A stretch of DNA of 63,431 nt, counting the filler, from Octopus bimaculoides (taxonomy: Eukaryota): NCBI RefSeq assembly GCF_001194135.2. It is 6 parts of 5 records of this genome, joined end to end, with 100 filler letters (N's around TTAATTAATTAA, not from the genome) between each part and the next. Parts side by side here need not be neighbours in the genome. Positions count along the whole stretch, not along the records: positions 50,101 to 56,031 come from NC_068982.1; 5 more parts are not named here. One strand, 5' to 3'. Made by a program: the position numbers and the translations under genes. This document shows positions 51,940 through 54,702 of this stretch, in pieces. The notes under the pieces are model-generated. The model worked only from the letters and a program-made list of their open reading frames with translations, was not told the origin of the DNA and did not search any database. Every line of letters begins with the position of its first letter. Position 1 is the stretch's first letter.

Positions 51940-52098
51940 CTGCCACAATAGCATAATCTGATCGACCAACAGTTAGGTCTAGAATGGCCATTTGAAGAGC
52001 GCTAATACTTGAACTACAGGCTGTGTCAACAGATGCTGCAGGACCGTGGAACCCAAACGAAGAGGCAATTCGACCGGGAAATTCAGATTTTGTATTCA
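51940..52098 (-). CDS. FAS/PKS ketosynthase active-site exon
   Basis: gtttcattccag|TG AAT...; NTKSEFPGRIASSFGFHGPAASVDTACSSSISALQMAILDLTVGRSDYAIVA; donor GCA G|GTTAGT. Confidence 0.9.
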
Positions 52099-52191
52099 CT
52101 GGAATGAAACAGTTATAAAAACGATTAAAAGTTGTAATTTGGATTGGACGGCGAAGGAAGTTGAAATATTTTGATGTTTCTGGAAACTTAC

Positions 52192-52366
52192 AATAACTAC
52201 TTTCGCTGGAAGTTGAAGTGGTTACAGCATCTTCATCGTTGAAGGTCATGGCTAAATAAGTTCCTGTTCTCTTCTGTCTTAAAGTTTTGTAAGGGACTCC
52301 AGAATCAACAATACATTCATGGATTACTTCCAATAAAGCATAAAGAGATGCTGGCATATATGGAGC
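52192..52366 (-). CDS. FAS/PKS ketosynthase exon
   Basis: ttctattcttgtag|GCT CCA TAT ATG; APYMPASLYALLEVIHECIVDSG...RTGTYLAM aligns to the FAS MDPQLRLLLEV..E.IVD.G...TGV region; donor TAT T|GTAAGT. Confidence 0.85.
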
Positions 52367-52799
52367 CTACAAGAATAGAAAAAATACGAGGATATTTAAC
52401 AAACGGGTCTTTTTAGAATCCTTTCCATCATATGATTTCTTTTTTTTTCCAATTTTCTTTTCAGATTTTCTACACTGGTGTAGTTTTGCATGCTGATTAC
52501 GAAAATCCCATTTATCTTTTGTAGAAATTAAAATGTTACAAGCCTTTAAAATTTGAAATTTTTAACTAATCGGAAGTCTCCATTGCTGATATACCAGAAT
52601 ATAGAAATATCAGCTAAGTCTCCCTCAAATTACATCCCGTCTTGAAAGAGATATATTGGAAATTATCATTTAGAAGAGAAAGGAAAGCGTTCCTGATGTT
52701 TTTCAGGGTCACCGATCGGAGTGGGGAGAGAAGGCGAGTTATCAAATCAGACACTTGGCTAGAATAAAGGAAACTTCGCCAAAGATGCTCAAGGACCCA

Positions 52800-53460
52800 G
52801 CCGTACGGGTAATTTTTTAGAGTAACACCCGCACGATTTTCACTAAGAAAAAAAAAAAAAGCCCTCAGATTTTTGGCGTGGAATCAAGTACCCTNNNNNN
52901 NNNNNNNNNNNNNNNNNNNNNNNNNNNNNNNNNNNNNNNNNNNNNNNNNNNNNNNNNNNNNNNNNNNNNNNNNNNNNNNNNNNNNNNNNNNNNNNNNNNN
53001 NTTTTTAGTTGAATGAATTCCTGTGAAATCCTAATATGGTACAAAACCCTTTTTTGGGGTCCAAAAATGGAGTGGTGTGTGGTTGAAGCCTCGGAAATTT
53101 CACCCACCCCCATTGATCTTTCCAGGGTTAGGGTTAGGGAAATACGTCCCGAATTCATTAGAAAAAAAACTTTTTTTCCTTAGTGAAAAAGATCAAGGGG
53201 AGTGGGTGAAATTTCCGAGGCTTCCACTTCACCTCATTTCGTTTTTCGGACCCCAAAAAGGGTTTTGTAGCATACTAGGATGTTAGAGGAACTCATTCAA
53301 CAACAACAAAAAAATTCCAATCATTCCGGGTCTCCCCCTTCGCTTCCCCCTTACCGAACCAAAATAAAGGATTTGCAGCATATTAGGAGGTCAGGGTACT
53401 TGATTCCACGCAAAAAATCCACGCAAAAAACCTTAGTGAAATATTACCGCAGTACGACCT
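52800..53460. mobile_element. Foldback-type element of about 660 bp inside a KS intron
   Basis: Nested inverted repeats 53009-53121 vs 53188-53301, 52876-52894 vs 53393-53411 (exact), and cactaag vs cttagtg; centre holds agggttagggttaggg. Confidence 0.8.
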
Positions 53461-54619
53461 CATGTAAGTGGGGTTTAGAGCCAAAGAGTGTGGACTTCAC
53501 TAAAGGTGTTAAGAGCATCAGATTGTGCCAACTCCACTAAAGATGTTTAAGAACCATGTGATGCAGACTCGCCCAAGAAGATATTAAGTGCCAATAATGA
53601 TGTTAAACGGATTAAGTATACCATTAAAAAACGGGAACATCTCCTTTTCACAACAGGATTTCAGTTGAAATAATATATTTCTAAATCTCTCAAAAAGATT
53701 TATGCAGTAGCAGCATGATAAAGTGATGGTATGTTGTCAACTTAATGTGACAGTCCCATGAAAAAGAAGAATGCTACTGTTATTTAGCCCTAGGAAACAC
53801 TGTTTCCTATTGGACTTGACACATTTCCTGTGTCCTTATTTTTTCAAAGTGGAGACAAGCACCTCCACCCAGCAAAGTCAGCATCCAGAGACTAGTTTCA
53901 GGGTCATTGCTCATCCTCAGTTTAAAAACCTTAGGACACAGNNNNNNNNNNNNNNNNNNNNNNNNNNNNNNNNNNNNNNNNNNNNNNNNNNNNNNNNNNN
54001 NNNNNNNNNNNNNNNNNNNNNNNNNNNNNNNNNNNNNNNNNNNNNNNNNNNNNNNNNNNNNNNNNNNNNNNNNNNNNNNNNNNNNNNNNNNNNNNNNNNN
54101 NNNNNNNNNNNNNNNNNNNNNNNNNNNNNNNNNNNNNNNNNNNNNNNNNNNNNNNNNNNNNNNNNNNNNNNNNNNNNNNNNNNNNNNNNNNNNNNNNNNN
54201 NNNNNNNNNNNNNNNNNNNNNNNNNNNNNNNNNNNNNNNNNNNNNNNNNNNNNNNNNNNNNNNNNNNNNNNNNNNNNNNNNNNNNNNNNNNNNNNNNNNN
54301 NNNNNNNNNNNNNNNNNNNNNNNNNNNNNNNNNNNNNNNNNNNNNNNNNNNNNNNNNNNNNNNNNNNNNNNNNNNNNNNNNNNNNNNNNNNNNNNNNNNN
54401 NNNNNNNNNNNNNNNNNNNNNNNNNNNNNNNNNNNNNNNNNNNNNNNNNNNNNNNNNNNNNNNNNNNNNNNNNNNNNNNNNNNNNNNNNNNNNNNNNNNN
54501 NNNNNNNNNNNNNNNNNNNNNNNNNNNNNNNNNNNNNNNNNNNNNNNNNNNNNNNNNNNNNNNNNNNNNNNNNNNNNNNNNNNNNNNNNNNNNNNNNNNN
54601 NNNNNNNNNNNNNNNNNNN

Positions 54620-54702
54620 CTTGGAGGAATTCGAAACATTCCAGGTGGCCAGCGAGTCGGACCAAACATGTCCACACTCTTCATTAAATTCTTCCAAAAT
54701 TC
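54620..54702 (-). CDS. FAS/PKS ketosynthase N-terminal exon, truncated by a gap
   Basis: ttttgcag|GAA TTT TGG; EFWKNLMKSVDMFGPTRWPPGMFRIPP matches the FAS EFWDNL..GVDM....RRW..G.YGLP segment. Confidence 0.85.

What the first reader, a model, noticed from the sequence alone, without database searches (positions are those of the whole stretch)
51940..54702. Highly diverged FAS/PKS-type ketosynthase: candidate unannotated lipid or polyketide pathway
Seen: three minus-strand exons encode EFWKNLMKSVDMFGPTRWPPG..., APYMPASLYALLEVIHECIVDSG...RTGTYLAM... and ...PGRIASSFGFHGPAASVDTACSSS...YAIVA. The catalytic Cys is intact, and splice sites and frames look clean. Established: housekeeping animal FAS keeps MDPQ.R.LLE and ANR.S; here they read MPASLYALLE and PGRIA. 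Molluscs are known to have FAS-like polyketide synthases (for example in sacoglossans) that make polyenes and pyrones. Inference: this is not the housekeeping FAS but a diverged paralogue that may make specialised metabolites in a cephalopod. The two catalytic His residues and the downstream domains are not visible here.
Basis: partly seen in the sequence, partly recalled or inferred. Interest (0 to 1): 0.8.

Follow-up and report, generated by a model that had tools for sequence, protein, structure and literature searches.

The report
Octopus FAS-like ketosynthase, known family
The exons are real and belong to an old mollusc-wide sister gene of fatty acid synthase, already annotated in Octopus bimaculoides and already published as a family, and its octopus copies have lost several catalytic residues, so a working polyketide pathway is doubtful.

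Summary
The minus strand carries clean AG/GT-bounded exons that encode the N-terminal half of a type I ketosynthase, with DTACSSS intact (Pfam PF00109, E 1e-29). There are four exons in the piece, not three; the fourth is at 50187..50101. The 678-N gap cuts exon 1. An ungapped orthologous octopus contig shows that about 61 nt of exon 1 and its donor site are hidden there, and that both gaps sit in collinear sequence.

The gene is not canonical FAS. It is 37-41% identical to FAS and 52-58% identical to the "mo-clade 4" animal FAS-like PKSs of Lin et al. 2024. It falls inside that clade in 300 of 300 bootstraps. That paper already reports the clade from all mollusc classes, cephalopods included.

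The gene is also not unannotated. Exons 2 and 3 appear verbatim in XP_014775589.1, "fatty acid synthase-like [Octopus bimaculoides]".

The specialised-metabolite inference is weak:
- The RefSeq model has Asp in place of the first KS histidine.
- The AT-like domain lacks its Ser, His and Arg.
- The ER-like domain lacks its NADPH motif.
- A related octopus copy has Gly in place of the KS cysteine.

Even so, dN/dS is 0.17. My verdict is a known family, low to moderate interest, and probably not a conventional synthase.

The parts
54620..54702 (-). KS exon 1, visible part (EFWKNLMKSVDMFGPTRWPPGMFRIPP). The acceptor AG is at 54704-54703. The exon runs into the assembly gap.
   Evidence: The same exon in L001 is 144 nt, phase 0.
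53942..54619 (.). Assembly gap (678 N). It hides about 61 nt of exon 1, the donor site and the start of intron 1.
52367..53941 (-). Intron 1, the readable part. 52808-53478 is an insertion that the relative lacks. It carries a 119-nt inverted repeat and the 107-N gap 52895-53001.
52192..52366 (-). KS exon 2 (175 nt; APYMPASLYALLEVIHECIVDSGVPYKTLRQKRTGTYLAMTFNDEDAVTTSTSSESSY, plus 1 nt).
   Evidence: It is verbatim in XP_014775589.1.
52099..52191 (-). Intron 2 (93 nt, GTAAGT...CAG). It is open in frame here, but it is 86 nt in L001 and is spliced out in the RefSeq model.
51940..52098 (-). KS exon 3 (159 nt; (L)NTKSEFPGRIASSFGFHGPAASVDTACSSSISALQMAILDLTVGRSDYAIVA). The active-site Cys codon TGT is at 52018..52016.
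50188..51939 (-). Intron 3 (1752 nt). It holds an AT-rich microsatellite at 51729-51897, a 10-N gap, and a decayed transposase-like remnant on the + strand.
50101..50187 (-). KS exon 4 (GANLILNPQHSIQFLKLGILSPNGASRPF...), cut off by the edge of the piece.

Best explanation
The piece is Octopus bimaculoides DNA. It carries four exons of the N-terminal half of the ketosynthase domain of a gene that RefSeq already models, incompletely, as 'fatty acid synthase-like' (XP_014775589.1).

The gene is an old molluscan paralogue of animal fatty acid synthase. It belongs to the 'mo-clade 4' animal FAS-like PKS family of Lin et al. 2024, and it is not the housekeeping FAS.

Shown:
- The exon structure.
- The intact Cys in DTACSSS.
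- Placement in clade 4.
- Purifying selection between two octopus copies.

Shown, but on database sequences that lie outside the window:
- The protein keeps the FAS order: KS, linker, AT-like, then ER-like.
- The first KS histidine is Asp.
- The AT-like domain has lost its Ser nucleophile, its His and its carboxylate-binding Arg.
- The ER-like domain has lost its NADPH glycine motif.

Inferred: the octopus protein does not run a self-contained iterative FAS/PKS cycle. It cannot load its own extender units. It probably cannot decarboxylate them. In a related octopus copy it cannot even form the acyl-Cys intermediate. It most likely survives as a conserved FAS-derived protein with a non-condensing role, whether structural, binding or some other activity. 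That role is unknown.

My confidence that the gene is a clade-4 member is above 0.9. My confidence in the 'not a conventional synthase' reading is about 0.5.
For: Identity:
- Pfam PF00109 scores E 1e-29. The best solved relatives are mammalian FAS, E 5e-28.
- P0153, which is XP_014775589.1 of O. bimaculoides, contains exons 2 and 3 verbatim.

Clade placement:
- The window peptide is 52-58% identical to the closest clade-4 sequences. It is 37-41% identical to mollusc and human FAS. FAS sequences are 58-78% identical to each other over the same 158 columns.
- In an NJ tree with 300 bootstraps, the window groups with SRR2889752/SRR7369732 in 100% of replicates and lies inside clade 4, apart from FAS, in 100%.
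- Window exons 2-4 score 160 bits against a clade-4 HMM and 90 bits against a FAS HMM. A human FAS control scores 169 and 285 bits.
- The window shares the shortened DM.G.TRWP segment with clade 4.
- The SRA runs that hold the closest clade-4 relatives also hold a canonical FAS.
- The paper reports clade 4 in all mollusc classes, cephalopods included, with unknown biochemistry.

Selection and gene integrity:
- Window against L001 over 138 codons gives dS 0.26, dN 0.045 and dN/dS 0.17. Fisher p is 1e-6.
- All splice sites are kept in both copies.

Catalytic residues:
- The KS motif EAHGTGT reads EADGTGI, while KSNLGH is kept. The AT motif GHSLGE reads GYGLAE, and GMGTQW is lost.
- The O. sinensis orthologue P0246 is 90% identical and has the same GYGLAE.
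- In P0246 the AT His is Asn, the Arg is Ile, and the ER motif LIHSGSGGVG reads LIHPPYDVVY.
- L001 and L002 read DTAGSSS where the window reads DTACSSS.

Family-wide pattern:
- The clade-4 representative SRR6832922_778 also has Gly at the AT Ser position (GQGIGS).
- Pfam finds KS and TE in it, but no AT, and no ACP in the two parts I tested.
- Other clade-4 members have lost the KS Cys and the first His. SRR3358325_1501 has Asn and Ala. SRR10527243_87 has Glu and Asn.
Against: - The window holds only about 167 residues of one domain. Every statement about His, AT, ER and TE rests on a Gnomon model of the same genome (P0153) and on the O. sinensis orthologue, not on bases I could read in the window.
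- P0153 is visibly mis-modelled. It has a foreign N-terminus and lacks exons 1 and 4, so a single-residue call such as His to Asp needs confirmation.
- I could not establish the species of L001. It could be a recent paralogue rather than an orthologue, and its Cys to Gly change could mark a copy that is decaying.
- The closest transcriptome relatives (SRR2889752, SRR7369732) keep Cys, His and His, so the subfamily may be catalytically active in other cephalopods.
- A dead AT does not exclude loading in trans.
- My tree used NJ on a trimmed alignment and did not include mo-clades 1 to 3.
- I checked no expression data for this gene.
Confidence: 0.7

Rival explanations
1. The gene encodes a working, diverged FAS-like polyketide synthase that makes a specialised lipid or polyketide in octopus. 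Its KS uses Cys, Asp and His, and extender units are loaded in trans or by a much-changed AT.
For: - The catalytic Cys is intact in the window, and the second His is kept in P0153.
- Purifying selection is strong, with dN/dS 0.17.
- The closest clade-4 relatives keep Cys, His and His.
- A full-length clade-4 protein keeps a TE with GYSFG, and Pfam PF00975 scores E 5e-14.
- Other AFPK clades are proven polyketide synthases (PMC10764717; PMC7280274, abstract).
Against: - The first KS His, which is needed for decarboxylation, is Asp in P0153.
- The AT Ser, His and Arg are all lost in two octopus species. The Ser is also lost in a distant clade-4 member.
- Pfam finds no ACP in the two tested parts of that clade-4 protein, the N-terminal 798 aa and the C-terminal 828 aa.
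- A related octopus copy has Gly at the Cys position while still evolving under constraint.
- No product or activity is known for any clade-4 protein.
Confidence: 0.2
2. The locus is a decaying or untranscribed pseudogene copy of a FAS-like gene. The lost catalytic residues would reflect relaxed constraint, and the RefSeq model would be an artefact of prediction.
For: - Many catalytic residues are lost.
- The active-site Cys differs between the two octopus copies.
- The gene models are fragmented in both octopus genomes.
- Transposon and repeat insertions sit in the introns.
Against: - Four exons show no stop codon or frameshift, and all splice sites are kept in two copies that have diverged to dS 0.26.
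- dN/dS is 0.17, significantly below 1, with p 1e-6.
- The AT-like region is 90% identical in protein between O. bimaculoides and O. sinensis, without stops.
- The loss of the AT Ser is ancient and shared across clade 4, so it is not recent decay.
- Clade-4 sequences were recovered from transcriptomes, some at high coverage.
- The fragmented models are explained by assembly gaps.
Confidence: 0.09
3. It is the orthologue of the canonical housekeeping FAS, evolving fast in octopus.
For: The best solved-structure matches by sequence are mammalian FAS, and RefSeq names it 'fatty acid synthase-like'.
Against: - It is 37-41% identical to FAS, while human and mollusc FAS share 58-78%.
- It scores 90 bits against a FAS HMM and 160 bits against a clade-4 HMM.
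- It never groups with FAS in 300 bootstraps.
- The runs that hold its closest relatives also hold a normal FAS.
- The AT and ER catalytic motifs that FAS needs are gone.
- None of its three intron positions matches those of a mollusc FAS gene.
Confidence: 0.01

Closest known systems
Mo-clade 4 animal FAS-like PKSs (AFPK or 'FLP'; Lin, Li, Krug & Schmidt 2024, Nat Commun 15:236, PMC10764717)
   Same: - The KS sequence is 52-58% identical to the closest members.
- It shares the shortened DM.G.TRWP segment and the EV..EC.VDSG.P motif.
- It falls in the clade with 100% bootstrap.
- It is a paralogue that coexists with canonical FAS.
- Beyond the KS, little of the protein is recognisable.
- The AT Ser is replaced by Gly, as in the full-length representative.
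- The paper reports the clade from cephalopods.
   Different: - The octopus copies go further than the closest relatives. The first KS His is Asp in the O. bimaculoides model, and the KS Cys is Gly in a related octopus copy.
- I found no TE exon in the part of the O. sinensis locus that I could read.
- The paper does not discuss catalytic residues of this clade.
[quoted passage not shown]
   Same: - It has the same thiolase-fold KS with DTACSSS.
- It has the same order: KS, linker, AT, then ER.
- FAS gives the best sequence matches among solved structures.
   Different: - Identity is only 37-41%.
- The MDPQLR and ANRLS motifs are changed.
- The AT Ser, His and Arg, the ER NADPH motif and the first KS His are lost.
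- The intron positions differ.
EcPKS1 and EcPKS2 of Elysia chlorotica (mo-clade 1 AFPKs, sacoglossan polypropionate synthases)
   Same: They are also FAS-derived animal enzymes that are paralogous to FAS.
   Different: - They match the window less well than FAS does: 72 and 64 bits against 97-101 bits.
- They are proven active synthases with a working AT.
- The paper finds that clade only in shell-less sacoglossans.
Condensation-incompetent KS-like domains of bacterial PKSs (KSQ loading domains, chain-length factor, KS0)
   Same: These are KS folds kept under selection after loss of the active-site Cys or His, as in L001 (Cys to Gly) and in some clade-4 members. This comparison is a resemblance recalled from my own knowledge, not a test.
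   Different: KSQ and chain-length factor carry Gln at the Cys position and still decarboxylate. Here the replacements are Gly, Asn or Glu, and nothing is known about activity or partners.

Membership tests
Type I beta-ketoacyl synthase domain (Pfam PF00109 + PF02801) | Significant match to the KS N-terminal domain profile | tested here: met
   PF00109 scores E 1.1e-29, 104 bits against a cut-off of 20.8, covering profile positions 21-228 of 252.
Type I beta-ketoacyl synthase domain (Pfam PF00109 + PF02801) | Active-site Cys in the DTACSSS motif | tested here: met
   The codon TGT is at 52018..52016 and aligns with the FAS active-site Cys. The related contigs L001 and L002 have GGA (Gly) there.
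Type I beta-ketoacyl synthase domain (Pfam PF00109 + PF02801) | Two catalytic His residues (EAHGTGT and KSN.GH) | tested here: not met
   These lie outside the window. In the RefSeq model that contains the window's exons (P0153), the first His is Asp (EADGTGI) and the second is kept (KSNLGH). This needs confirmation on genomic DNA or cDNA.
Canonical animal FAS (FASN orthologue) | KS groups with animal FAS and is as conserved as FAS is between phyla | tested here: not met
   Identity is 37-41%, against 58-78% among FAS sequences. It groups with FAS in 0 of 300 bootstraps. The FAS HMM gives 90 bits and the clade-4 HMM gives 160 bits.
Canonical animal FAS (FASN orthologue) | Active malonyl/acetyl transferase (GHSxG Ser, His, Arg) | tested here: not met
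   The motif reads GYGLAE in P0153 and P0246. The His is Asn and the Arg is Ile in P0246. These sequences lie outside the window.
Canonical animal FAS (FASN orthologue) | Active enoyl reductase with an NADPH glycine motif, plus KR, ACP and TE | tested here: inconclusive
   The ER-like segment of P0246 has LIHPPYDVVY in place of LIHSGSGGVG. KR, ACP and TE were not found in the part of the O. sinensis locus that I could read. The gene model may be incomplete.
Mo-clade 4 AFPK (Lin et al. 2024) | KS falls in the mo-clade 4 branch, separate from FAS, mo-clade 5 and PKS | tested here: met
   NJ tree on the authors' own trimmed alignment plus the window, 100% bootstrap. Identity and HMM scores agree. 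Mo-clades 1 to 3 were not in my panel. EcPKS1/2 of clade 1 score lower than FAS.
Mo-clade 4 AFPK (Lin et al. 2024) | Only KS, AT and TE are recognisable, and the rest has no predictable similarity | tested here: inconclusive
   Pfam finds KS plus linker in P0153, and only a sub-threshold AT in P0246. This is consistent with the family, but no TE was located in octopus.
Mo-clade 4 AFPK (Lin et al. 2024) | The authors' classifiers: FAS_KS and PKS_KS HMM score windows, and AFPK-Finder | not testable with these tools
   These need the full KS domain and the authors' models. The window holds less than half of the domain.
Mo-clade 1 AFPK (EcPKS1/2 type, sacoglossan) | KS closest to EcPKS1/2 | tested here: not met
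   EcPKS2 scores 72 bits and EcPKS1 scores 64 bits, against 97-101 bits for FAS. The paper finds that clade only in sacoglossans.

The most novel reading that the evidence does not exclude
Octopod members of mo-clade 4, and perhaps much of the clade, are conserved pseudo-enzymes derived from fatty acid synthase. On this reading the megasynthase fold is kept under purifying selection across molluscs, while the KS Cys and His, the AT Ser, His and Arg and the ER cofactor site have been lost repeatedly. The protein would then serve a non-condensing role, such as scaffold, lipid or acyl binding, or regulation of the true FAS, and would not make a metabolite.
Probability: 0.35. Interest if true: 0.55.

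Novelty: already known. Interest (0 to 1): 0.3.

Why it matters
Animal FAS-like PKSs are a recently recognised source of animal-made natural products. Mo-clade 4 is the most widespread of them in molluscs and the least understood.

This locus adds no new kind of system. The gene is already in RefSeq, and the family has been published with cephalopods included.

What the second look adds is a caution and a lead. An intact DTACSSS motif does not by itself show that a synthase works. In octopus the rest of the catalytic machinery is largely gone, yet the gene is conserved. If that holds up, clade 4 would be an example of a giant metabolic enzyme turned to a non-enzymatic or unconventional use. 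Cephalopods should then not be counted as polyketide producers on the strength of this gene.

Tried and rejected
1. I ran the search for homologous proteins with the spliced 140-aa peptide. It returned only an 84-aa Logan ORF and missed the RefSeq protein that is 100% identical over 110 aa. The recall of the word index is imperfect.
2. The exhaustive representative search would not accept the spliced peptide. The read-through ORF I used instead was swamped by giant modular PKSs, whose many KS domains add up in score. That search was uninformative.
3. I tried to obtain more of the O. bimaculoides locus through P0153. It is not on record.
4. I tried to see the O. sinensis KS exons. Locus L003 starts downstream of them, and tblastn found none in its first 9 kb.
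5. I looked for a TE exon in L003 with a full-length clade-4 protein. None was found.
6. I looked for the 5' exon and for the odd N-terminus of P0153 in 54703-56031. Neither was found.
7. I tried to name the species behind the closest transcriptome relatives and behind L001. The supplements give no taxon names.
8. I ran Pfam on the transposase-like remnant in intron 3. There were no hits.
9. ARAGORN found no tRNA in the SINE-like stretches.

Explanations I rejected:
- Canonical FAS orthologue.
- Sacoglossan-type (mo-clade 1) PKS.
- A retained, coding intron 2. It is 93 nt and open here, but it is 86 nt in the relative and is spliced out in RefSeq.
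Full report
**1. What is in the sequence**

The piece 50101-56031 was read on the minus strand. Four exons are present, each with a canonical AG acceptor after a pyrimidine tract and a GT donor wherever the boundary can be seen.

| Exon | Window coordinates | Length | Peptide |
|---|---|---|---|
| 1 | 54702..54620 | 83 nt visible | EFWKNLMKSVDMFGPTRWPPGMFRIPP, then the N gap |
| 2 | 52366..52192 | 175 nt | APYMPASLY...SSESSY |
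| 3 | 52098..51940 | 159 nt | (L)NTKSEFPGRIASSFGFHGPAASVDTACSSS...YAIVA |
| 4 | 50187..50101 | 87 nt, cut by the piece edge | GANLILNPQHSIQFLKLGILSPNGASRPF |

- Exons 2 to 4 join through two phase-1 junctions into 140 residues without a stop.
- The peptide matches the N-terminal ketosynthase domain, PF00109, at E 1.1e-29. Its best solved relatives are mammalian fatty acid synthases, at E 5e-28.
- DTACSSS aligns with the FAS active site. The Cys codon TGT is at 52018..52016.

**2. The assembly gaps**

- The 678-N gap (53942-54619) starts inside exon 1, so the exon 1 to exon 2 junction cannot be read in the window.
- The one close hit in the protein collection (P0001) led to two short Logan genomic contigs, L001 and L002. 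They align with the window through exons and introns at about 82% identity.
- In L001, exon 1 is 144 nt and phase 0. It ends ...PPRIGLLPNLNQFDAHVFNNLEE|GTAAAG and is in frame with exon 2. By homology, about 61 nt of exon 1 and its donor are hidden in the gap.
- The blocks on either side of both gaps keep the order and orientation of L001.
- The 107-N gap (52895-53001) lies in intron 1. It sits inside a stretch, 52808-53478, that L001 lacks and that carries a 119-nt inverted repeat. It is irrelevant to the coding sequence.
- A third gap of 10 N, not flagged, is in the AT-rich microsatellite of intron 3.

**3. Which gene it is**

- A later search returned P0153, which is XP_014775589.1, 'PREDICTED: fatty acid synthase-like [Octopus bimaculoides]', 534 aa. 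It contains exons 2 and 3 verbatim.
- The window is therefore O. bimaculoides, and the gene is already annotated.
- The model is incomplete. It starts with MPTTNVPPDYPERTENG, which is not encoded in the piece. It lacks exon 1, which the gap breaks. It also jumps from exon 3 past exon 4 into the C-terminal half of the KS.

**4. Not the housekeeping FAS**

Lin et al. 2024 (PMC10764717) described animal FAS-like PKSs (AFPKs) and divided the molluscan ones into mo-clades.
- Mo-clades 1 to 3 are confined to heterobranch gastropods. The sacoglossan EcPKS1/2 are in clade 1.
- AntiSMASH recognises no domain in clade 4, InterPro recognises only KS-AT-TE, and the biochemistry is unknown.

I copied 27 clade-4, 2 clade-5, 3 FAS and 2 fungal PKS sequences from the paper's Supplementary Dataset 13. 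I then added the window peptide and human FAS.

| Test | Result |
|---|---|
| Identity over the 158 columns the window fills | 58%, 57% and 56% to the three closest clade-4 sequences; 37-41% to FAS; FAS sequences share 58-78% with each other |
| NJ tree, 300 bootstraps | Sister to SRR2889752/SRR7369732 in 100%; inside clade 4 and apart from FAS in 100% |
| HMMs built from the panel | Window exons 2-4: 160 bits for clade 4 (155 bits without the two closest) and 90 bits for FAS. Human FAS control: 169 and 285 bits |

- The window also shares the clade's shortened DM.G.TRWP segment.
- The SRA runs that hold the closest relatives also hold a normal FAS. The family is therefore a paralogue of FAS, not its orthologue.
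- EcPKS1/2 match the window less well than FAS does.
- None of the three intron positions coincides with an intron of the Siphonaria FAS gene given in the paper's Dataset 12. That fits an old split.

**5. Is it alive?**

- Between the window and L001, 138 codons give dS 0.26, dN 0.045 and dN/dS 0.17. Fisher p is 1e-6.
- All splice sites are kept and there are no stops. That argues against a neutral pseudogene.
- I could not identify the species of L001. The 90% protein identity equals that between the O. bimaculoides and O. sinensis proteins elsewhere in the gene. An orthologue in a related octopus is therefore the simplest reading, but a recent paralogue is not excluded.

**6. Does it work as a synthase?**

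The evidence here lies outside the window.
- Aligned with FAS, P0153 reads EADGTGI where FAS has EAHGTGT, so the first catalytic His is Asp. It keeps KSNLGH.
- P0153 also reads GYGLAE where FAS has GHSLGE, so the AT nucleophile Ser is Gly. The GMGTQW motif is gone.
- The O. sinensis protein P0246 ('fatty acid synthase-like isoform X1', 919 aa) is 90% identical to P0153 over the region they share and has the same GYGLAE.
- P0246 is collinear with the FAS AT and ER domains. It has Asn at the AT His, Ile at the malonyl-binding Arg, and LIHPPYDVVY where FAS has the NADPH motif LIHSGSGGVG.
- In P0246, Pfam finds only a sub-threshold AT.
- In L001 and L002 the KS Cys codon itself is GGA, giving DTAGSSS.

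The pattern is not confined to octopus.
- The 2902-aa clade-4 representative in the paper's Dataset 11 keeps the KS Cys, His and His, and a TE with GYSFG. It has GQGIGS at the AT site.
- In that representative Pfam detects KS, linker and TE. It detects no AT, and no ACP in the N-terminal 798 aa and C-terminal 828 aa that I scanned.
- Two other clade-4 sequences have lost both the KS Cys and the first His. These are SRR3358325_1501 (Asn, Ala) and SRR10527243_87 (Glu, Asn).
- The paper's main text does not discuss catalytic residues of this clade.

**7. Reading**

The identity claim is firm. This is an O. bimaculoides member of mo-clade 4, an old paralogue of FAS, and it is already annotated.

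The mechanism is inferred. A protein without its own acyltransferase nucleophile, apparently without the decarboxylation His, and in a sister copy without the acyl-accepting Cys, cannot run the standard iterative cycle. Yet it is conserved. The most likely reading is a FAS-derived protein with a non-condensing function that is still unknown.

The rivals are an unconventional but active synthase loaded in trans, and a decaying pseudogene. The report gives the evidence for and against each, and the tests that would refute each.

Three weaknesses remain:
- The window holds less than half of one domain.
- P0153 is an imperfect prediction.
- I had no expression data.

**8. Novelty and interest**

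The family, its presence in cephalopods and its unknown biochemistry are all published, and the gene is in RefSeq. I therefore rate the finding as already known.

The inference of a specialised-metabolite pathway from an intact Cys alone went too far.

The residual interest is the repeated loss of catalytic residues under purifying selection. That hints at a megasynthase-derived pseudo-enzyme.

Noticed in passing
window 50101-50187 (minus strand): A fourth KS exon (GANLILNPQHSIQFLKLGILSPNGASRPF...) lies at the edge of the piece.
   Followed up: yes
window 52808-53478: This is an insertion in intron 1 that the orthologous contig L001 lacks. It carries an inverted repeat (53003-53121 and 53188-53306, 119 nt, 82% complementary) and the 107-N gap. 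It looks like a foldback or MITE-like element.
   Followed up: partly
window 51729-51897 and 51792-51801: An (AT)n/(ATATATAC)n microsatellite in intron 3 is expanded relative to L001. It holds a third assembly gap of 10 N that the scan's note did not flag.
   Followed up: partly
window about 50470-51030, + strand (inside intron 3): A frameshifted, stop-ridden reading frame contains ...WPSRSPDLSSPDFLLWGYLKEKAY... and ...ENGRNLKDVIFHT. From memory it resembles the C-terminal half of a Tc1/mariner-type transposase. Pfam gave no hit, so this is unconfirmed.
   Followed up: partly
window 52099-52191: Intron 2 is 93 nt and has no in-frame stop, so a 140-aa ORF (51935-52357) reads through it. In L001 the intron is 86 nt, and RefSeq splices it out. 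It is therefore an intron and not coding sequence.
   Followed up: yes
window 54940-55200 and 55660-56031: These stretches look like tRNA-derived SINEs. A similar tail sits at the end of L001. ARAGORN finds no tRNA gene there. I did not classify them.
   Followed up: partly
L001:1372-1530 and L002 (related octopus contigs, runs SRR11869390 and SRR11869391): The codon that matches the window's active-site Cys (TGT) is GGA (Gly), giving DTAGSSS. The surrounding exons are otherwise conserved, with dN/dS 0.17. The species of these runs could not be determined.
   Followed up: partly
L003 (O. sinensis CM016860.1:207396180-207452730): In O. sinensis the gene is split into two NCBI models. One is a 413-aa KS model that ends upstream. 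The other is the 919-aa 'fatty acid synthase-like isoform X1', which starts at a Met inside the AT-like region. The linker exon at L003:9149-9328 lies between them and is in neither model.
   Followed up: partly
Supplementary Dataset 13 of PMC10764717: Some published mo-clade 4 sequences lack the KS catalytic residues. SRR3358325_1501 has Cys to Asn and first His to Ala. SRR10527243_87 has Cys to Glu and first His to Asn. The full-length representative has Gly at the AT Ser position. The paper's main text does not mention this.
   Followed up: partly
tool behaviour: The first protein search and the exhaustive representative search both failed to return XP_014775589.1, although it is 100% identical to the query over 110 residues. 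It appeared only when I queried with a distant relative. Negative results from these searches should be read with care.
   Followed up: no
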